Source: Guillardia theta CCMP2712
Taxonomy: Eukaryota > Protista > Cryptophyta
Direction of reading: 5' to 3'
NCBI RefSeq assembly: GCF_000315625.1
Contig: NW_005434645.1
Location: 233,925-297,924 of the forward strand
Length of the DNA: 64,000 nt
The translations under genes and the position numbers were made by a program. A model generated the notes under the pieces. The model was not told the DNA's origin. It searched no databases and saw nothing but the letters and a program-made list of their open reading frames with translations. Positions 16,068-29,778 of the stretch are shown here, in pieces (the stretch's first letter is position 1; the number at the start of each line of letters is the position of its first letter).

Positions 16068-16780
16068 TCACCCCTCATGCTCAATCTCCTTTCCTTGGCC
16101 CCCATCTCCTCTTTCTCCCCTCCCTTCATCTCCTCCCCTCTCATCTTTTCCCTCATCCTTCCTCCTCTTGGGTACAGGCGCCTTGCTGTTCTCACGGGCA
16201 TAGAACTTCTTGAAGAGCTCTATAGCCTCCTGCTCGTGTACTCCAGCTCGCACCTGGTAGCTCGCAAACCCGACAGCACGCAGCTGCGAGTCGCTCTCAT
16301 GCATGCACATAACCGAACCGTTCCCTCCAAACTTGTCGTTGCAGCATCCGAAGACCGCTCTCTCCCTGCCAACACTCTCAGCATCCTCCCCTGCCCTGCC
16401 CCGCAGGCATCCGTCCAGACTTACAACCCGAGCATCGCAAGCGCAGAGGCACACATGATACAGGGCTCGCATGTCACGTACAGCGTACAGCCAGCAAGCA
16501 GCTGCTGCGCCCAGAGATTGTCTCCGCCCTCCTCCACGAGCGAGTCGATCGCCACCATCTCAGCATGGCGCGTAGCGTCCATGCGCTCGTTGGTCTTGTT
16601 GTGCCCTCGGGCGATCACGACTCCTCCCCTCACCATGACGCAGCCAACTGGAACTTCTCCCTCCTCGAGCGCCTTCTTCGCCTCCTCTTCTGCGAGCGCC
16701 ATCATCTCGTCCTCCTCCTCCTCCCGCCCCCTCTCGCTCCCCCCCATGCCGCCCCCTGTGCCGACCATGAGGCCGGCCAT
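16068..16780 (-). CDS. ADAT2: tRNA-specific adenosine-34 deaminase catalytic subunit (TadA/Tad2 family), one intron ~16366-16424
   Basis: GEVPVGCVMV, HAEMVAID, LYVTCEPCIMCASAL, FGCCNDKFGGNGSV, FKKFYARENSKAP. Confidence 0.93.
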
Positions 16781-17690: not shown

Positions 17691-18800
17691 AACTCCTTTC
17701 CTCCATCCTAGAGCCCTCTTCTCTTTTCCTCATACCTTGCCCTTCCTCTTTTGCTGCTCTTCACAGTATCCTGATGCGCCTGGTAGGCATAGCGAGATGC
17801 AGGGTCAGAGCGGGCTGACAGGAGCACAATATCTCAGCCTTATCAAGCTCTTCTGCAGTGACTTTCCTCCTGAAGTGATCGAGTCCTTGACCAAGGTGAG
17901 GAGCGTGTGCTAGTGCCGCTGCCGCTGCCGATGGGGAGAGGGGGGGAGTCGCTGGCTGAGAGGAGCACGGGAGACGATGAGGACGAAGAGGCTCTACTGA
18001 CGTCCTCGGCCGTCCCCAGGTGATGGACAAGAAGACTTCGGAGAGCATCTCCTTCTCTTACTTCGCCGCGGGCATCAATGCCTGCCTCATGTACGAGGTG
18101 AGTGGGAGGGCGGGGGCGATGGAGAGGGCGGGGAGGTAAGGCTGATCCATCTCATGGCAGGAATTCTTCGAGCATGCTGAGTATATCTTCAACTCGTGCG
18201 ACGTCGATGCGAAGGGTCCGACACGCTTGTTCCCTCCCTCCTGCTCCTGTCCCTCACTTCCTGCTCCTGCCTCCTTTCTCCCTCTCCCACAACTTCTTCA
18301 AGTTCTGTTCTTCTCTTCCACCCTCCACCCACTCCTCCTCACCTGCTCCTCGACTCTCCATGTCCTCTCTCGACCCTCACTGCTCCTGCAGGGCAAGTGG
18401 ACTACGACGTTTTCATCAGCATCTTGCGCCAGATGAATCAGAGCTCTTCTGACGTACTGCATGAGGTCAGTGAAGCTATCCCCTGCTGCGCAACCCCAGC
18501 TGAGATCTAGCTCGTCTGGTCGATCCGGCTGATGTCGCTCACTGCCAACAGAGTGAAGGATGGAACATCCCGAGTTGCAAACTCTTGGATTCTGCGCGAA
18601 ATGTGCTAGGTGAGAAGCTGCCTCCTCCTGCTCCTCCTCACTGAAGCTTTGCCAGCGGCGCGAGAGCGAGGCGCGGAGAACAAGAATGTCACTTATAAGG
18701 TTTACAAAATCTTTACTATCACATCAAAAATCACAAAAGCAAGCAGGAATTCATCATGGCAGTCATCAAGATATTTGTGCTCCGCAATGAAAACAAGTAA
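17053..18800 (+). CDS. TPGS1: tubulin polyglutamylase complex subunit 1-like (TPGS1/C11orf49 family), multi-exon
   Basis: RIIa/Dpy-30-like VYLKDCITLVLENRPEKPLEFIADYL, then RQAFMDNLASAYFTL, GLTGAQYLSLIKLFCSDFPPEVIESLTK and ISFSYFAAGINACLMYEEFF, matching the TPGS1 pattern. Confidence 0.75.
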
Positions 18801-18820
18801 AAACCTCACTCCGCCACTCT

Positions 18821-21800
18821 TCACTCCTCCACCACATTCTCCGGAACATTGTTCTCGACGATGGATGGCCAGGGATCGTTCTCATTTGCATCCCCCGTGA
18901 ATCTGAAGATCCGATCGGGAACATACCGTGGGCAGTCATCTCCCTCGAGGTCCTGGTGGAGGGTCAGAGAAGAGCAGGAGGGTACAGACTTCCTCTTGCT
19001 ACCTGGATGCCTCCCGACGGCCCGTCGTCCCCATCAGCGAAGGGCAGGGGATCATCGAAGCCGATGTAATTGAAGCATCGCCTGCACAACAAACATGAGA
19101 TCTTCAGCACCTCCTCCTCTCCCCCGTGCTTGTTCCTCCTCCTCTCGGCTCCCCATCTCTTCCTCCTTCGCCTTCCCCTCCTGTTCACCTTCTCCAGCTC
19201 AGTGGCATGAAAGACTCGATCTCAATGCACGTAATTGTCCTATCGCTAGCATCAGGCATCTTCGAGCCGCAGCAGGAAATGTGCAAACCTGTTCCTCATT
19301 GCAAACCCATCCTTGCCCTCGTTGAGCTTGTCGTAGGTGATGGTCAGCTGAGCGATGAGGATGTTGAGCAGACCAATAGTGATGCAACTGCACGAAACAG
19401 CCGTAAGGGGAAGATGAGAACAGGAGGGGATGAGCAATCGGAAGAAACTCCGAGGAGTGTGAAGACTCACGTCACGAAGATGAGGAGGAGCGCCCTAGTA
19501 AACGAGCCAATGGTGCTGTAGTTCGGGGAGGAGATGCCCACAATCTTTTGAGGGAAAGCATCAGGCTTTGCGAGCTCAGCACGGCAGTTCTTACAGTCTG
19601 GAAAAGCACGACCAGACTCGTGTCCAGGCCCTCGTTGAAGGGTCCCTCAGCTAGGATTGAAAGAGCACTTCCAAACGCTGCGATGCAAGTCAGGAATGTA
19701 TGTGTTGCAAGCAGGGAGCCACACCCGCCAACAAGACAAGGATCATGAAGAGGGAATGGCTGATGTCGTGCAACATGATGCCAATGGTGTAGGTGAAGGC
19801 AGCCATAGGAGTCGACAGGATGCTGATCTGTTGGGTAGAGTGAGATTCTCCACTATCCGAGGAATTCCTCGTTACCTGGAACACTTGGACCCACAGGAAG
19901 ACGGCAGAGATGGCCTGGATCACTTTCGTACTGTTGATGGTATCATCTGTCTCGGCATCGACTGAAGTTGCGCGATCAGTTGCAACAGCTGGAAGTCAGA
20001 TGGAGGTTCACCTGCTGGTGTTGTGCAAGGGCCCCCAGAAGGACAGTCGTTCTCCTCACAATTCTGAATCAAGGATCAAAATCTCCAACGGAGGGTTTCT
20101 CTCATTCTTACCCGTGTGGCGTAGGTAATGATGATCAACAAGCACGACACAACTCGTAGGATATTCCAAATATTCCAGAAGTATCTGCAAGCCGGTCAGA
20201 TGGAAGACGTCTCCTATTTGAGTGACATGGCAACAGCACTATACCTCGGAAGGTGTAAAACGCAAAAGCCGAGGTTGAGGGGAAGATACATCTTCCTGAC
20301 AATTTGAAAACAGAAGATCCAGAGCTAATCAAACGCGATTAATGTCCTGCTGTGGATGGATGAAATATTCACCTGAATCGCCAGCGAGAAGACAGTGGCA
20401 ACCATAAGAGCGATTCGAATAGACTGAGCAGAAACAAAGTTATCTGGATGTTGAAAGAACTGACCGCACTCACCTCGGACTTGTGGTGGCATCCGGAACT
20501 GTCTGCCACGATTTCCCACATGAACAAGAAGAGCATAACCATGTAGCTGAGCTCCTTGAAGAAGAAGATCCTCAGGCCAAAGAGCTGCCACTTCAACTCG
20601 AATGTCTTGCGGACGGCAGGGTGTTGGAAGCACTCTTGATCACCTTCGAAGCAACGTCAGCCATCTTCTCCTTCAAGGTTCGTGTTCTCTGTTGTGAAAT
20701 ACCAAGCTCGACAAGCCAGGCGAGCGGAGAGATCCATGGATCCTTGCTTTGGTCCGGATCGCCGTACAGGTCTTTGATGTAGTAGTTCACTTTGACCTGA
20801 ACTACCAGTCAGTCCTATGGCAGACATGCCACAATGAAGCGACCTTTCTTCCTGCAAACTTCTGCTTGGAATGCCACAGAAGGCCGTCGAGCAGGACTTG
20901 AACCAGCGATCCACTCTCTCTCGCGAGAGTCTCGACTAGATCAGGATGATACTGAAACATCTCCTGTTCAGAAAGGAAGGTGACTGAAGATCTTAAACGA
21001 TAAACAACAGCAAGAGCGAGACCTGTCGTCCGTAGTAGTACCCATGGATGTCCGCTCTGATCGTCAAGAGATCACTGTTCATACAACGTCAAACTCAACT
21101 GTCATCTGAGCTCTTCAAACCTCAAAATGAACTCCACGAGTGGGTACTTGCCATCGTGCAACGCCCAGTACAACGGCGAGAGGGTGGCTCCATTGATATT
21201 CAACTGCTTGGAATCAGCTCCAAAATCACCACCTGCAGCGATCTCACCTCACACAACCATTTGGCTCTCTGGTTGCGAGGTGAACAAGCAACGGCATCCC
21301 GCAACTCATCCACGTCTCCATCGACCAGCGCGTGGGTGATACCGTTGCCTCCGAGGTTCAGGCCGCGAGACATGCTGTTTGCTGCTCGCTTCCACATCTA
21401 GACAAGTTGTCAGACGTAACAGTGCCTGCTCTGGCAATCGATGCATCGAAACCTCTTTCCATGCCTTTTCAGACTTTTCAGTCCATGATTCCGCTAAAAT
21501 CTGTGACGCACATCAGGCAATCAGGCAAAATAAAGTCAAGAACGCACCTCCTCCAACATAGCGATCACTGCTTGTCCAAATGGACTGAGGTACTCCGCTC
21601 GGACACCATAACGAATGTGTCGCACTGTCAACTCGAACAGATTTTTGAAGAATTCCTTTTGAACGTGCGTCAGCTTTTAACCACTTTCAAGAGTTCAACT
21701 CAGCACCTCGGGATCGGTGATGCTCACGATGAGCATGTTGACAATGTGATGGACAAGGGTTCCCCACCTGAACATGCACAATGTTCAGTTGCGCTGCAAG

Positions 21801-24800
21801 GCAGGTGAACTTCCAGTATACATCTTCAACGAGCGTCGGAAGAGATGGGTCTGCTCAGGAGCCTGGAGGGTGCAAGTCATATGACAAAACTCAGGCACAA
21901 ATGACGAACCAGCTCGTTGAGATGCTTCCAGAACAGTTGACCGAGCTCCTGTCGCAATGACCGAAATCAAAATCATCAACTGGGGAAGTACTTCTGCTGA
22001 CCTCTTCCTTGCATTTCTCCTTCACGGCGTTCCAGTCATTCCAGACAACCTGATTCATGTTGGAATCATGACCCTCTAGATCGCGGGAAAACGCCTGCGG
22101 GGGTACAAATAAGCTCTTTGTGCAAGAGACCATAGAGATCGCCTACATCCATGTTCATCCTCCACAGCCAACGGAGCGCCAGAGTCAAGTTTTCATTCCA
22201 ACTGAACATTCCAAGTCAGAGTGCAATACTATTGTGAAAACAGTCAAGGTCTCATACCGTGACCCCAACGTGTCAGCAATTGCAAGCTCTATCGCCTCAG
22301 CAATTGAAGACAGGTGATCGCTCCTTATTCCACTGCAAAGAACGTCAGTCAATAAACCTTGGAACAAATAACACTCAAAGTTACCAATCATAAAACTTTG
22401 GAGAGAATATGTAGACTTTCTCAATCTGCTTCTCCGGTTGCCAGACCAGCGCAGTCACTTCAATCAAGAATGAATAGACTGTGTTAATGAGTTCCTGGTA
22501 TTCGATCAGCATTCGAATAGACTGCAAATTACCAGTATACCTCCTCTTCTTCATGGAACTTGTTTACAACAAGTTTCGAATCAGTGTGGGTTTCTGGACA
22601 ACGCAACCACGATCAGTCAAGACAACTGAACGCACACGGAAAAATGTATATACCCTCTCCGTTAGATTTGCTTTTGTTGAGTTGGAGAACAGAAGAAAAG
22701 AACTGAAAATCCGCAGTGAGACAATACTGTAACATACTCCCACCTTACCGCGTCAGATTGAATATTGCGCATAGATTTCCCACCCAATCTCTTCTGGGAA
22801 TTCTGCTGCAATTTTTCGTTGGCCTCGGCTACTTTGTGCTCGCGCACCATCTTCTGGAATCGAAGCCTGCTATTTTCGAATGCGCTGCGGAACAGATGTG
22901 GGCAGAGCTTTGCAAGCGCGGTACGAAGACACTGCTTCAACCTCCTCTCATTGGCTGGGTCTCGGATGAGTTCAGACGCTTCATGCAAAGGCGCCGCGTA
23001 GTCTTCGCCCTCTCGGATGGCCTCTGCCATGTTTTCGCAAACCATTCGGAAGATTGTCCCCCATGATTTCTCAACTTCCTCAGTCCAGGCATCCTCAGCA
23101 GCGTCGGCGAGAGCATTCATGATCACGGGTCCGATCAAAGGAATGTGATGAGGCCTCACATGATAATTAACATGTCGTAGCCCGAGCCATGCCACTTGTT
23201 GCTTCATATCGTCTGGTTCATCTGCAAACGAAACAAGCATCCCGAGTGTATCACCCATCTTGACAGCCATGTAATCACGTGGCTTGTTGAATAGGGAGGC
23301 TGCACTCGGGGCCAGCTTAAAGAGACCATCATAGATCATCCCTCCAAGATCACTTGCAGTATATTTCTCAGATATGGTGTCCCAGGAATCTCGCACAAGA
23401 CCAAGAGTCGAACTCACGTCTTTCAATGACTGCTCTAGCGCCTCTGCCAGGAAAGACCACATCCATGTCCACGCTCTGTGCTCTTCAGTAGTGAAATCTT
23501 TGCCCAGAGCTGTTGAAAACACACCTAAAATGATTTTTTGCATGATGGGCATTTGACTCTGGTGCACGCCTTTGCGATGATGCATTGGTGCCAATTCTGC
23601 GATCTTGAAGTATATGCTGGCCGGAGAATGTATGTTGTCAACAATGCTGGAAAGCATGTCAACGAACTTTGTACCTTGAACTGCAGCATTTGTGAAGCGA
23701 AACATTGGTTCAAGATGTTCATCGTCTCTCACAGACTCATAGATCATGCATCCCAAATCAGCATACGACACTTTCTTGATCAACTTTTCCCATGACTGGG
23801 CAACAAATTCTGCATGATATTTCCATTCCTCCGCGTCAATAATAGGTGCTTTGCTGGCCTTCAAGCCTGCCCTCTTGCGCCTCTGACGCCCGCTCCTGAA
23901 AACACCTCCTGCAGATTTGAGATTCGTTCCAGATCTCCTTGAACTGGAAACAGTTGGCGCCTGACGCGACGATGCCAACGAATGTGTGGAGCGCGATCTA
24001 ACGGATCTGGGGGATTCACATGCTTGTTCCGGCGCAGTATAGAATTCTCTGGAATTGCTGAATGGATCTGTCTTCCTTGCATGCCCTTCTCCATTTCCCG
24101 ATTGTCCATTCATGTTGGCGAAAATGTTTTCGATGGAGCTTCGACGGCGGTTCCGATCTCCGGAGCTTGATGTGCTGTTTTTCCTTGAGGAATTCTTGGC
24201 ATCCCTAGGCTTTTCCAGACCATTGCCATTCTTGTAAGCTTCGGAGATCGCCATGAATGGACAAGACCCTCCACTATTCATGTCCACACCAACATGTAGT
24301 TCCGCCAACCGATCTTGTTTGCCGGAATGAGCCCTGCCAGAACTGCTTGTGCGTCCTATAGAGCCAGTGGACGAAGTTCGCTTGAAGAGATCAAAACCAC
24401 TCGACGGGATCCTTGGAAATGAACCAGACGAAGTCCTACCGAACTCCTGGTTCTGCAGCTTCGTCGTCAAGGAGCCATCAGATGAAGTTCGCCTGAATTC
24501 ATCCGATTCAGTCGTTTTAAATGGTTCCAAGCTCTTTTCGATATCTTCCCATCCAGATTTGTTATCATGTGCGTTGGCACTATGAGGGCTTGCAAGGTCA
24601 TCAGCCTCAGCGCTTGAGTCGCGTACTCGCTGGGTCTCATCGGAATCCCAGCTAGTCTGCTCCTTCTCCTCTTCCAAGACATCGAGCGTCTCGAAAGTGT
24701 ATCCATGTATGTCCTTCAGATTCGGGATCTCGGAACCCCCCAAGATCACAGAGGCGGACAGCGAGGCCACGCCTGGATGATATATCTTGTCCTTTCCATC

Positions 24801-25495
24801 ATGATGATGGTCATTACCATTCTTATCCTTCTTCGAGCGATGAATAAAGGTTATGATCTCCTTGCTCGGTTTGGGCGAAAGGGGTTTCTCAGTCTCGTCT
24901 GATACGGGACTATCCTTCGAAGCTTCCTTGCCAATTGGAGACTTGCGGTTTCCGTGTTTGGGCGAATCGCTTCTTTCGCCGCTCTGTCCAGTCGGACTTT
25001 TCCTTCGGCTAAACAATGTAGCATCTGCTTTCGATTTGCTTTGTTCTTTGTTCTTGGGTGAACTTTCATTGCCCATGTTGCTTGCAGTCAGCTCACTGAT
25101 AAAATCACCAGCGTACAAAGCAGGGAGCTCTTCAAAGGCCATGTTACTGTGGATCCGAAAGAATTTTTCCGTTGCATCCTTCGAGGCAAAGTGCTTGATG
25201 GTGAACTCTCCTCCGGGATGCCTTGGCAAGAATGGAGTCACATCAAACACAAATCCTTCAATGATGATCATGGTTCTCCCATCCTCTTGGGCATGGTTTA
25301 GCTGCTCTTGATTCCACTTTGGGTTGTGCAGCGCATCCCTGCGCGCATTTATGGCTTGGCGTATCGACTCTGACAGCATCGCGGTTGGTTGTCGAACAAC
25401 AACCTGCAAAGCACAGAATCACTTTCGGGCTTCAAACTCATGCTGTCGAAGACATTCAGCTGCTCTTCATCTACATCAGAACGAACTATGCTCAT
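18821..25495 (-). CDS. cytochrome b5 + four globin domains + ankyrin-like linker + TRP(V)-like six-TM cation channel (~30 exons)
   Basis: b5: VFDVTPFLPRHPGG...DATEKFFRIHS. Globin F-helix segments: LAPMHHRKGV, LGLRHVNYHV, FSPKFYDCGI, LTVRHIRYGV. Pre-S1: HPAVRKTFELKWQLFG. S2-S3: PRYFWNIWNILRVV. Pore: LFQTIVGISP. S6: GLLNILIAQL. TRP helix: FAMRNRTITCIEIESFMP. All are joined in frame through GT-AG introns starting at the donor at 22748. Confidence 0.85.
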
Positions 25496-26799
25496 AGAAC
25501 CGCATCTACATCCCTCCATCCCCATCCCTCACATCCCTGACTGCCGCAGTCGCTGCGTCCCTGCATTGAACCCTGTGTTGAGTCCCTTTGTTGCTGTTTC
25601 ACTACTACCTCTCCCAACCCCACCCCCACCCCAAAAACGTCAATTGTCCGAGCCTACCCCTGTGGACAGAGACACTCCAGACTAGTAACCCCACCCCACC
25701 CCTTGGCCAAGATAAATGCTCCGACTTCTTAGGGAATACCCACCTCACGATATCTTGATCACTTTTCCCATACCCCCGAAAATACCTGAAAGTACCCACC
25801 ACCGGTCATGAGTAACACCTACATACTCAACACCCACCCCGCCGTTTCGAGAGGGCGGAGTAGTACCAGGTGTACACCCTAGTAAAGTGGGCAAAAGGGG
25901 GGACATAGGGTGGGGTACAATTGCCTGGCTGGAGGAATATTTCACCAGGTGGAGGAACATGGGATGACCCAACGGCCAGATGTTTTAGTTAGGCGTAAAC
26001 GTGTGCCATGACAGTCAGGGGTGGGGACGTATCCCTGGGACCATGGCGGGTGGGGGGTACTTTTGTCGGTCAAAGTATGAGGAGTGTGGTCCTGTCCAAC
26101 AAGGTCTTGGAGGGGGTAGGGGTGAAAAACCTAGGGGGTAGTGTCAGGGAGATTCCCAATCATGGTTTTGACTGACACGCACGGGATCGCAAGACTTTGC
26201 GAAACCACTCATTTCTGGAAACGTCCAATTCGAAAAGATGTCTTTCCCCTCAGTTTTATACTGAATTTTGGTGAAGAAACCCCATTTTCCCACCCTTTCG
26301 CGCATACTCGTATCCGCGGGCTGTTCTAAAATAAGACTTGTATCATTTACGACCGTCCAGCCCGGCCTCCATGGACCCCTCCTCCGATCTCACGAACCCC
26401 ACCCAGATGTAAAAGGAGCACTTGTACTAGACAGCGGGGTCACGAGGTAACGACATTTCCGCAGATCAATCTCGGTCCATTTTAAAGGGTCTCACTGCGA
26501 ACGGTACTGCCCGTACAAATGAGGCGCGCAACTGTACCAATGATTCCGAGTCCGTACTAGCAAAGCTACCACGCCGCTATACGTGTTGGAGTATTGCGGT
26601 ACAACGTGGGCTGTCACCCGGCGTCGGTCACGTAATCTACTTCATTGTGCGGCGTCTGGAGACTCTGATCAGGGGCCTCGTCAATACACATATAGACATA
26701 GTAGTGATGAGCGCTGGCGGACTCAATCCGTCCGACCGTCGGGCTTGCGAGGTGCTGAAAAAAATTTACACAAAGAGTCGTTCATGTTCGACTGAGAGA

Positions 26800-27499: not shown

Positions 27500-29468
27500 T
27501 CAGCCGTCGTGGCTCCGCTCGAGTCTCGCCCTCTCCGGCGAGTAACCTGCGGGGCCCAAGGCTGACTTGATCCACTCGCAGTTGTCGTTCTCCAACGATA
27601 TGACGGTTAGAGGAGGTTCCTCCGTCTTCACCTCAGCGCACGCGACCGACAGGACGTGAGGGCCGTGCTCGGGGGCCGTCCTGCCTCCTTCGATCCACTG
27701 CTCGGGCTGACAACAGCACAGAGAGCACATCATGATGGAGAATGCGAGCTGAAAGATGAAGAGGATCAGACTCAAGCTCGCGATCGCCCGTGCACTCCCA
27801 GCTAACGTCTTGCAGAAGCCTTGACCCGTGTATCGCTGGTGTAAATCTGCCATAATGGCCCGAGGTCAGCGATCCCTGAAGCATGAGCAAGCTATTCTTA
27901 CCGCACTCCCAATCGGACGCCAGGGCGAGACTCAGGGCTGCTGACCCTCCTCCCAAACAGCTGAGGATACCGAGGATGAGGACTGCGAGAAGTAAACCCC
28001 CGAAAACCTTGCTCTTGTACTTGCTGGTGAACACTCCCGTGGCTCCGAAGAACAAGGGGAAAATTGCTGGGATCAAACCGCACAATCCCAAGGATGTGAG
28101 CAGCGCTTTCGCTGCGTTGCGGTGGCTTTCACATAAACGTAGGCTCGAATAAGAGACCACCGAAGATGACGATGAGGTTGACGACGATGAGGTTGACGAC
28201 GATGAGGTTGACGACGATGAGGTTGACGACGATGAGGTGGACGACGATGAGGTGGACGACGATGAGGTGGACATTGAGGAGGAATACTGCCCACTCTGAT
28301 ACCCAGCATTATATCCGGAGTCGTGGACGGAGCTCAGGTCCAGGTTGTAGCTCGAAGTCAGGTGCCCTGCTGCTACCTGGCTGTTGTAGTCCCCGGAGAT
28401 CAGTCCGGAGGAGTAGGTTGTCGGCGAGGAAGGACAGCAGACAGCCACGTCTTCGCTGTGTACGCAATCATGGGAAGCCCACCCTCCAAAGGAGCATGAC
28501 GTAAGCTGCGACTCGCTGCCGCTGCATGACACTTGATCCATCCAGATGGTTCCGGTCCCTCCCCCGAAGGAGCCAACCGACATCGCGTACGTTGTCGTAC
28601 ATCCGACTTGCCTGCAGACTACTTGTGCGTCTGGGCTCGAGAAGTCGTCGTCACAAACCGTTCCCCATGCTCCGTTGTGCTGCACCTCCACCCGACAACA
28701 TCCGGCTGTGTTGCATGCTGCAAGTCTCAGCCCCCCTATGGAGACTCCCTGTAAATTTCTCGTGCACGAGCCTGCTGTGCTGGCGCTGTCATGTATGAGC
28801 TGGCCTGTGCTGTATCCCGAGTTGTGTCCAGCTTGGAAGCCTGCGTTGTATCCTGTGTTGAAGCCCGAGTAGCTACCGATATCGAACCCGCTGCAGTACC
28901 CCGAATTGTACCCCGAGTTATATCCTATGTTGTACCCCATGTTGTAACTCGAGGAGTACCCAGACAAGTCTAAACTTGTATCCAGGTTGTATCCCGAGTT
29001 GTATCCATAGTTGTACGTTGTCGAGTATTTGCCGCTAGAGTAGTATATCGAGGAGTATCCGCTGTTGCTGTATGTCAAGGACTGTGGGTTGTCGTAGTAA
29101 CCCGTGTTGTAACCTGTGTTGTACCCGTAGTTGTAGCCTGAATTGTAAGTGTACACGAACTTCGACTCGTATCCTGTATTGTATCCTCTGTTGTACCCCC
29201 TGTTGTATCCATTGTCATAACCCCTGTTGAACCCAGAGTCGTATCCTAAGTTGGAGATGGAGGTTGAGGGAGATGAGGAGGGGGGCGAGGAGGAGGGGGG
29301 CGAGGAGGAGGAGGAAGGAGAGGAGAAAGAGGACGACGCAAGAGCCTCGTCGCATCTCTGTACTTGGTAAGCTGCCGGGACTATGCCCGCGATGAACAGT
29401 CCGAGGCCAAGAACGATGTTCACGATGCTCATGGGCAGTACAAAACGCATGGTTGGTTTGCGCATCAT
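27500..29468 (-). CDS. four-TM (CD20/MS4A-like topology) protein with GYN repeats, an SRCR domain and Ser-rich tracts in the first loop; intron 27847-27901
   Basis: SRCR: RVEVQHNGAWGTVCDDDFSSPDAQVVCRQVGC...IWMDQVSC...HDCVHSEDVAVCC. Four hydrophobic helices; the fourth comes from ORF 27500-27853, reached by a GT-AG intron. Confidence 0.85.
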
Positions 29469-29778
29469 GGTTGGAGAGAGCAAAGCCGATGTGTGTGAGG
29501 GAGCTTGAGCGAGTTTGTTGGTCGGTGAGGCTTGGAGAAGAGGATGAAGGGGCAGGAGGGCAGCTGTAAACTACCCCACCCCTCCTCACTTCGCCATGAT
29601 GCGGTCAGATGGCTGGTCAGTCTGACGTAGGCGGATCATGAGGGATCACTGATGCACGAAATGTCAAGGTTTCGCTTTCCGGTGCTCTATGCGGTGCCGG
29701 GGCTCTCGAGTGTTAAGCCTTTCTTACGTAAGTGTGTCATACCGTAGCACGTCGCTGAGTCGGCAAACTTGACCCTTT

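What the first reader, a model, noticed from the sequence alone, without database searches (positions are those of the whole stretch)
18821..25495. Heme-sensor ion channel: cytochrome b5 + four globins fused to a TRPV-like channel in one polypeptide
Seen: the 915-aa ORF (b5 plus two globins) has a GTAAG donor at 22748. Following canonical GT-AG introns, mostly ~45-60 nt, keeps one open frame through two more globin folds and an ankyrin-like segment (SPLYWALHDGK). The frame continues into a complete TRP-type membrane module ending at the stop at 18821: HPAVRKTFELKWQLFG, YFWNIWN, pore LFQTIVGISP, S6 LLNILIAQL. No stop or new start separates the halves, and globin 3 spans the junction. Established: globin-coupled sensors couple O2/NO/CO binding to enzyme or chemotaxis outputs, cytochrome b5 reduces globins, and TRPV channels are tetramers gated through cytosolic N-terminal domains. 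Inference: this is a self-contained gas/redox-gated cation channel carrying its own electron donor, with up to ~16 His-ligated hemes per tetramer. I know of no characterised channel with this architecture; uncharacterised predicted homologs may exist in other algae.
Basis: partly seen in the sequence, partly recalled or inferred. Interest (0 to 1): 0.95.

Follow-up and report, generated by a model that had tools for sequence, protein, structure and literature searches.

The report
Globin-carrying TRP-like channel of algae
One expressed gene of the alga Guillardia theta joins a cytochrome b5 and four haemoglobin-like domains directly to a TRP-type ion channel; it belongs to a widespread algal family I could not find described, and it probably lets oxygen, nitric oxide or cell redox state open or close an ion pore, which nobody has tested.

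Summary
The fusion is real. The genome is Guillardia theta. Spliced RNA contigs from three studies give a 30-exon gene, ATG 25379 to TGA 18821, 1664 aa, one frame. One contig runs from cytochrome b5 across 22748 into the first channel exon; the only contig break is explained to the base by 38 nt shared with a paralogue. Order: b5, linker with a conserved Cys-Pro-Phe motif, four globins (the third has no proximal His), about three ankyrin-like repeats, then a TRP-fold membrane module (TRPV3 E 1e-25; paralogue model Z 18.4 to TRPV1). It lacks six ankyrins and the TRP-box Trp, so it is TRPV-like, not a TRPV. The genome has eight paralogues; relatives occur in cryptophytes, dinoflagellates, chromerids and Tetraselmis. 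The channel-proximal globin keeps its His in 63/63. A 2014 paper listed globin 2 as a stand-alone globin and never mentions a channel. Gating by haem state is inferred (about 0.6); b5 is an accessory relay, not an electron source. The scan found the same architecture earlier at paralogous loci of this genome.

The parts
25404..25405 (-). Spliced-leader trans-splice acceptor AG; genomic part of the mature mRNA starts at 25403
   Evidence: Contigs X2 and X5 start at 25405; the 13 loose letters of X5 match the published cryptomonad spliced leader (PMC5619915), compared by eye
18821..25379 (-). Whole coding sequence: 30 exons, 29 GT-AG introns, 1664 aa
22749..25403 (-). Long first exon (b5, linker, globins 1 and 2, start of globin 3)
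   Evidence: read as one ungapped 2657-nt piece in RNA contigs
25107..25307 (-). Cytochrome b5 domain with both axial His (His54 at 25220, His77 at 25151)
   Evidence: Pfam PF00173 E 1.2e-15; both His present in all 8 paralogues
23830..25100 (-). About 420-aa Ser/Gly/Lys/Arg-rich, poorly conserved linker
   Evidence: composition; weak match among paralogues
24255..24263 (-). Conserved Cys-Pro-Phe motif (aa 373-375), candidate haem-regulatory (CP) motif or redox Cys
   Evidence: in 8/8 paralogues; in 10 of 44 family N-termini against 0.04 in shuffles
23409..23828 (-). Globin 1: Tyr B10, Phe CD1, Gln E7, His F8 (His600 at 23582); flavohaemoglobin-type pocket
   Evidence: paralogue model Z 17.9 to globins
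23001..23408 (-). Globin 2: Tyr B10, Phe CD1, Met E7, His F8 (His736 at 23174); same sequence as the published 'single-domain' globin EKX46654.1
   Evidence: Hell's Gate globin E 7e-13; supplement of PMC4101818, by eye
22147..23000 (-). Globin 3 (approximate limits): split pseudo-globin, helices A-C in exon 1, a disordered insert, helices E-H in exons 4-6, no proximal His
   Evidence: exon 4 holds no His; His in 13 of 57 family members at this position; paralogue model
21355..22070 (-). Globin 4 (approximate limits), channel-proximal: Trp B10 (21930), Phe CD1 (21841), Trp E7 (21766), His F8 (His1082 at 21619)
   Evidence: His in 63/63 family members; paralogue model Z 17, rmsd 1.8-2.1 to globins
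20600..21350 (-). About three ankyrin-like repeats, beta-hairpin and helix-loop-helix linker (approximate limits)
   Evidence: paralogue model residues 137-295 align with TRPV1 from residue 249; Ank_3 only E 0.09 on exon 14
19330..20599 (-). Pre-S1, S1-S6 and pore (filter Gly1523 at 19538; S6 Asn1553 at 19365 and Ile1556 at 19356)
   Evidence: family profile against TRPV3 425-715, E 1.3e-25; hydropathy; mapping
19189..19329 (-). TRP helix; Ala1574 (19302) stands where TRPVs have the TRP-box Trp
18821..19081 (-). Conserved C-terminal beta-strand domain and stop

Best explanation
A TRP-superfamily ion channel whose cytosolic sensor is a chain of globins. Shown: one mRNA and one frame; TRP fold; globin 4 joined without a linker to the ankyrin-like domain, where TRPV1 has its first ankyrin repeats; haem ligands conserved. 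From established knowledge: such channels are tetramers, usually cation-permeable, gated through the ankyrin, linker, pre-S1 and TRP-helix network. Inferred: globin 4 binds haem; a change in its iron (oxidation state, or O2/NO/CO binding) moves its last helix and with it the ankyrin-linker domain, shifting the S6 gate. Globins 1 and 2 bind or turn over gas (globin 1 has an NO-dioxygenase-type pocket), globin 3 is a haem-less spacer, and the tethered b5 relays electrons from a separate reductase to reset the ferrous state. The output would be Ca2+/cation flux in response to O2, NO or redox state. My odds: fusion 0.97, TRP fold 0.97, globin 4 binds haem 0.9, haem state controls gating about 0.6, a gas is the physiological ligand about 0.4.
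For: RNA joints and contig arithmetic; fork explained by paralogue; full-length single-transcript paralogue P0165; every channel-module match in the genome lies at one of the eight globin loci; last globin abuts the ankyrin-like domain in every homologue that has both; His F8 63/63 and Phe CD1 58/63 at a mean column identity of 25%, against 13/57 in the neighbouring globin; b5 attached at the N-terminus in some clades and the C-terminus in another; TRPV matches by profile and structure.
Against: No haem binding, current or gating was measured. Trp B10 and Trp E7 in globin 4 of this gene would crowd the ligand pocket, and the pocket varies across the family (E7: Gln 25, Leu 14, Trp 11). The filter is poorly conserved (Gly 25/40, no fixed acidic residue), so selectivity is open. 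Most members lack b5. Models are of a paralogue, monomeric and without haem.
Confidence: 0.6

Rival explanations
1. The b5-globin chain is a tethered enzyme (NO dioxygenase, nitrite reductase or ROS handling) that shapes local NO or redox chemistry; the pore is gated mainly by another stimulus (heat, stretch, lipids, Ca2+) and only tuned indirectly.
For: Globins are F-family, nearest to flavohaemoglobin-type domains; globin 1 has Tyr B10 and Gln E7; b5 with b5 reductase reduces cytoglobin for NO dioxygenation (PMC7475203).
Against: An enzyme would not need rigid attachment; the invariant globin is the one fused to the gating domain, while b5 and the distal globins vary in number and place.
Confidence: 0.2
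2. A sensor of free haem or iron status: haem loading of globin 4 and of the Cys-Pro-Phe motif, not gas binding, gates the channel.
For: CPF motif in 8/8 paralogues and enriched in the family; CP motifs are the best-known haem-regulatory motifs (PMC6356037); closed Trp/Trp pocket in globin 4.
Against: Globin folds usually hold haem tightly (my knowledge); many homologues lack the motif; no binding data.
Confidence: 0.1
3. The globins are structural, or the protein does not conduct; haem state has no effect on a pore.
For: Variable filter, missing TRP-box Trp; one globin is already haem-less.
Against: His F8 63/63; S6 Asn-x-Leu-x-Ala and TRP-helix Arg and Glu conserved.
Confidence: 0.08
4. Two adjacent genes (a b5-globin gene and a channel gene) joined only by the reader's splicing.
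For: No single contig of this locus spans b5 to pore; only 21 nt of exon 13 lie on the upstream contig; depths of the two contigs differ in two runs.
Against: The break recurs at one place in three studies and equals a 38-nt run shared with paralogue L022, as predicted from the 22-nt overlap; paralogue and homologue transcripts are single ORFs.
Confidence: 0.02

Closest known systems
TRPV channels (TRPV3, TRPV1, TRPV4, TRPV6, insect Nanchung/Inactive) and TRPA1
   Same: Pre-S1, S1-S6, pore helix, S6 gate motif, TRP helix, ankyrin-like repeats, linker beta-hairpin and C-terminal strands; profile E 1e-25 to TRPV3; model Z 18.4 TRPV1, 18.2 TRPV6, 17.1 Nan-Iav and TRPA1.
   Different: About three ankyrin-like repeats instead of six, preceded by globins; TRP-box Trp replaced by Ala in 34/40; filter lacks the fixed Gly-x-Gly-Asp; 13-18% identity.
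G. theta chimeric b5-globin proteins and 'single-domain' globins of Smith, Vinogradov and Hoogewijs 2014 (PMC4101818)
   Same: Same genes: EKX46654.1 equals globin 2 here; the 1497-aa EKX39126.1 matches paralogue P0163 by length; b5 and three His-F8 globins were noted.
   Different: The main text has no mention of channel, ankyrin or TRP; globin 3 is not in its census; this gene was treated as a 126-aa stand-alone globin domain.
Globin-coupled sensors (HemAT, DosC, GcHK)
   Same: N-terminal globin, C-terminal output domain; the logic of haem state controlling an output.
   Different: Those use S-family globins and soluble outputs (PMC7475203). Here the globins are F-family (S-family structures score Z 12-13.5 against 16-18), there are several in tandem, and the output is a pore.
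Haem- and CO-regulated channels (KATP via SUR2A, BK)
   Same: Haem and gas act on an ion channel (abstracts of PMC5834611 and PMC12346439).
   Different: They bind haem through short Cys/His motifs, not a globin fold, and are K+ channels.
Flavohaemoglobin; cytoglobin with b5 and b5 reductase
   Same: F-family globin with Tyr B10 and Gln E7 coupled to an electron carrier.
   Different: No FAD/NAD-binding reductase in this protein; membrane channel attached.

Membership tests
TRP superfamily (group 1) | S1-S6 fold with pore helix, detectable homology to TRPs | tested here: met
   family profile E 1.3e-25 to TRPV3; paralogue model pLDDT 89.6, Foldseek E 5e-11, VIA Z 18.4
TRP superfamily (group 1) | TRP helix after S6 | tested here: met
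   helix 595-611 in the model; Arg 36/39 and Glu 27/37 in register with TRPV3
TRP superfamily (group 1) | Tetrameric cation conduction | not testable with these tools
   no oligomer model, no electrophysiology
TRPV subfamily | Six N-terminal ankyrin repeats | tested here: not met
   about three helix pairs; alignment to TRPV1 starts at residue 249, a globin lies upstream
TRPV subfamily | TRP-box Trp | tested here: not met
   Ala in 34/40 and in this gene
TRPV subfamily | Filter Thr-Ile-Gly-x-Gly-Asp | tested here: not met
   first Gly present here and in 25/40; no conserved Gly-Asp
TRPV subfamily | Linker beta-hairpin plus C-terminal strands | tested here: met
   strands 244-260 and 631-650 in the paralogue model; VIA alignments run to residue 652
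TRPV subfamily | Branches inside TRPV in a TRP-wide tree | not testable with these tools
   no reference TRP sequences were available as ids; only hit ranking (TRPV and TRPA within about 1 Z unit)
3/3 haem globins (F family) | Myoglobin fold with His F8 and Phe CD1: globins 1, 2, 4 | tested here: met
3/3 haem globins (F family) | His F8: globin 3 | tested here: not met
   no His in exon 4; Phe in the paralogue; 13/57 in the family
3/3 haem globins (F family) | Binds haem and gaseous ligands | not testable with these tools
   needs spectra
Globin-coupled sensors (S family) | S-family (HemAT/protoglobin-type) globin | tested here: not met
   Pfam Globin, not Protoglobin; lower Z to HemAT, DosC, GcHK
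Globin-coupled sensors (S family) | N-terminal globin fused to a C-terminal output domain | tested here: met
Cytochrome b5 | b5 fold with two axial His | tested here: met
Flavohaemoglobin | FAD- and NAD-binding reductase domains in the same chain | tested here: not met
   none in exon 1 or in full-length paralogues; the genome's only PF00970 matches lie on contig C8

The most novel reading that the evidence does not exclude
The first ion channel that uses a globin as its ligand-binding domain: a widespread algal and alveolate TRP family, including coral symbionts, gated directly by O2, NO, CO or the haem oxidation state, with eight paralogues in G. theta possibly tuned to different ligands. 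If shown, it would be a new category of gas or redox receptor.
Probability: 0.55. Interest if true: 0.95.

Novelty: new variant of a known kind. Interest (0 to 1): 0.85.

Why it matters
How algae sense O2, NO and redox state quickly is largely open, and the function of G. theta globins was called a puzzle in the paper that listed them. If these globins are the sensor of a TRP channel, the puzzle becomes a patch-clamp experiment, most of this organism's catalogued globins are reassigned as parts of eight channels, and a new TRP family spanning cryptophytes, dinoflagellates (including Symbiodiniaceae), chromerids and a green alga is defined. A genetically encoded gas- or redox-gated pore would also be a useful research tool.

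Tried and rejected
Start at 25495: rejected (spliced-leader acceptor downstream of it). My own first guesses of three splice sites (a skipped exon at 22654-22702, acceptors near 22520 and 20296) were corrected by RNA joints and depth arithmetic. Two-gene reading: rejected. A giant-virus origin for the intron-free homologue P0185 on an up to 284-kb metagenomic contig: not supported, neighbours are eukaryote-like (PATROL1 TPR, aminotransferase). Exon-by-exon Pfam scans of the small exons gave only weak hits (E 0.03-0.2). The raw-read run X18 laid only 20 short reads and showed nothing. Ten literature searches found no globin-TRP fusion; subscription reviews on microbial and algal globins are not in the library. 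The careful tree did not finish; the quick tree is unrooted.

Full report
Source. The window is G000:C29:233925-297924 of an 87.1-Mb, 669-contig genome. A homologue named Guillardia theta GUITHDRAFT_143733 maps to a paralogous locus on a contig of the same length, 419,931, and the published G. theta globin EKX46654.1 reads identical to globin 2 here. The organism is the cryptophyte G. theta.

Gene structure. I laid four runs on 19541-25540. Three contig sets from three studies (X2, X5, X8; RNA by guess, but they are spliced) show the same joints, all CT..AC on the plus strand, that is GT-AG on the minus strand. Fifteen joints are listed, including 22703-22748, and nine more are fixed by contig coordinates and depth. 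The resulting model has 30 exons and 29 introns of 44-107 nt, an open frame of 1664 codons from ATG 25379 to TGA 18821, and reproduces the contig lengths exactly (3410 nt; position 1115). The last five introns were not covered by joints; they are supported by one loose end matching exon 26 and by collinear matches of paralogues and of homologue P0005. The contigs start at 25405, and X5 carries 13 extra letters that match the cryptomonad spliced leader of Roy 2017 (PMC5619915).

Is it one transcript? One contig runs from b5 through all globins and is spliced 21 nt into exon 13; a second starts in exon 13 and holds the channel. The two overlap by 22 nt at the same place in all three studies. With 31-letter assembly words (my knowledge of Logan), that overlap predicts a fork caused by 38 shared nucleotides. 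Paralogue L022 shares exactly 38 spliced nucleotides there (9 + 29), and no other within-exon run shared with a paralogue exceeds 25. The break is an assembly fork, not a gene boundary. In addition, paralogue P0165 (1582 aa) is one ORF with b5, globins and channel on a single 4886-nt transcript contig. No long read of this locus was available.

Domains. b5 has both axial histidines. A 420-aa low-complexity linker holds one conserved island, a Cys-Pro-Phe motif found in all eight paralogues and in 10 of 44 family N-termini against 0.04 expected; CP motifs are known haem-regulatory motifs (PMC6356037), but binding is untested. Globin 1 has Tyr B10, Gln E7, His F8; globin 2 Tyr, Met, His; globin 4 Trp, Trp, His. 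Globin 3 begins in exon 1, is split by a disordered insert and has no proximal His. Because the joined protein could not be submitted, structures were predicted for paralogue P0165 (about 45-90% identical exon by exon). Its globin 4 plus channel folds at pLDDT 89.6: residues 1-135 match globins (Z 17, rmsd about 2) and 137-652 match TRPV1 249-748 (Z 18.4), TRPV6 (18.2), Nanchung-Inactive and TRPA1 (17.1), then TRPC, TRPM and TRPY1 (14-15). Foldseek's top 50 are all TRPVs, and the family profile hits TRPV3 425-715 at E 1.3e-25. The last helix of globin 4 runs within two residues into the first ankyrin-like helix, at the place where TRPV1 has its first three ankyrin repeats (repeat limits from my knowledge).

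Family. The genome has eight such loci, collinear exon by exon, and every match to the channel module lies at one of them. A search with the globin pair alone returned 150 representatives, about 30 of which also match the channel exons. With further searches there are 63 non-redundant proteins with a globin next to the ankyrin-like domain. Named sources: Guillardia, Hanusia, Hemiselmis, Chroomonas; Chromera, Colpodella, Polykrikos, Gymnodinium, Biecheleria, Effrenium, Durusdinium; Tetraselmis. Transcriptomes of predatory species may include prey. The channel-proximal globin keeps His F8 in 63/63 and Phe CD1 in 58/63, the next globin keeps His in 13/57, the third in 48/49, at 25% mean column identity. 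b5 is N-terminal in the Guillardia clade and in two environmental proteins, C-terminal in 7 of 8 members of a clade with Tetraselmis (SH-aLRT 99, quick unrooted tree), and absent from most others, some of which are truncated. b5 is thus an accessory part that appears at both ends, which points to a functional link with the globins. All my homologue searches used globin-containing or family queries, so globin-free relatives elsewhere are not excluded.

Mechanism. Shown: fusion, folds, conserved ligands, rigid adjacency. Inferred: haem state in globin 4 is passed through the ankyrin-linker domain to the TRP helix and S6 gate; globins 1 and 2 bind or consume gas; b5 relays electrons from a separate reductase (one PF00970 locus exists on C8). 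I give this about 0.6. The Trp/Trp pocket of globin 4 in this gene and the variable pocket across the family make oxidation state as likely a signal as gas binding. Rivals are a tethered NO/redox enzyme with indirect effect (0.2), a free-haem sensor (0.1), a structural or non-conducting role (0.08) and two genes (0.02).

Comparison with what is known. It works like a globin-coupled sensor with a TRPV-like pore as output. It is a TRP-superfamily member by fold and profile, but not a TRPV by three tested features (six ankyrins, TRP-box Trp, filter motif), and not an S-family globin-coupled sensor. Smith, Vinogradov and Hoogewijs 2014 (PMC4101818) described two b5-globin chimeras and several 'single-domain' globins in G. 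theta, one of them globin 2 of this gene, with no mention of channel, ankyrin or TRP in the main text. A 2020 globin review does not list a channel output in the passages found. Databases carry the proteins under automatic names only. Ten searches found no description of the fusion, but subscription reviews were not searchable.

Verdict. On what is shown it is a new variant of the TRP kind; if gating by haem state is shown it would be a new category of receptor. Earlier notes of this scan reached the same reading at paralogous loci; I saw them only after my own analysis and do not count them as evidence. Interest 0.85.

Noticed in passing
window 18000-18821: The channel contig is 2523 nt, leaving about 890 nt after the stop; unspliced, it would reach into the convergent plus-strand ORFs near 17900-18510. 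Long 3' UTR or merged overlapping transcripts.
   Followed up: no
L017 and L018 (C78:203800-223299): Two paralogues lie head to head within a few kb; two more lie 25 kb apart on C178. All eight share the long first exon and intron positions.
   Followed up: partly
L020 (C192): This paralogue has three Cys-Pro-Phe motifs in its linker and L023 has two.
   Followed up: no
L029:194-6814 (P0045): A 2206-aa homologue holds two complete globin-channel units in tandem; P0044 (Polykrikos) continues into further globins after its channel.
   Followed up: partly
L032-L037: A homologue about 50% identical to G. theta is encoded without introns on metagenomic contigs of a eukaryote, with a b5 ORF 450 bp upstream on the same strand, probably its first exon.
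   Followed up: partly
L017 near C78:206500 or another paralogue; window 19725-19830: In runs X2 and X8 a second, less similar contig lies on exon 24, the most conserved membrane exon; its source paralogue was not identified.
   Followed up: no
window 16421-16780 (-): Zinc deaminase ORF (Pfam dCMP_cyt_deam_1 E 2e-25), probably a tRNA adenosine deaminase exon.
   Followed up: partly
window 27633-29483 (-): 616-aa ORF with an SRCR domain (E 6e-24) and Gly-Tyr-Asn repeats, upstream on the same strand.
   Followed up: partly
P0001, P0028: Other multi-globin proteins: one of 2461 aa with 14 matching stretches, one of 1208 aa with seven globins and a C-terminal b5 but no channel match.
   Followed up: no
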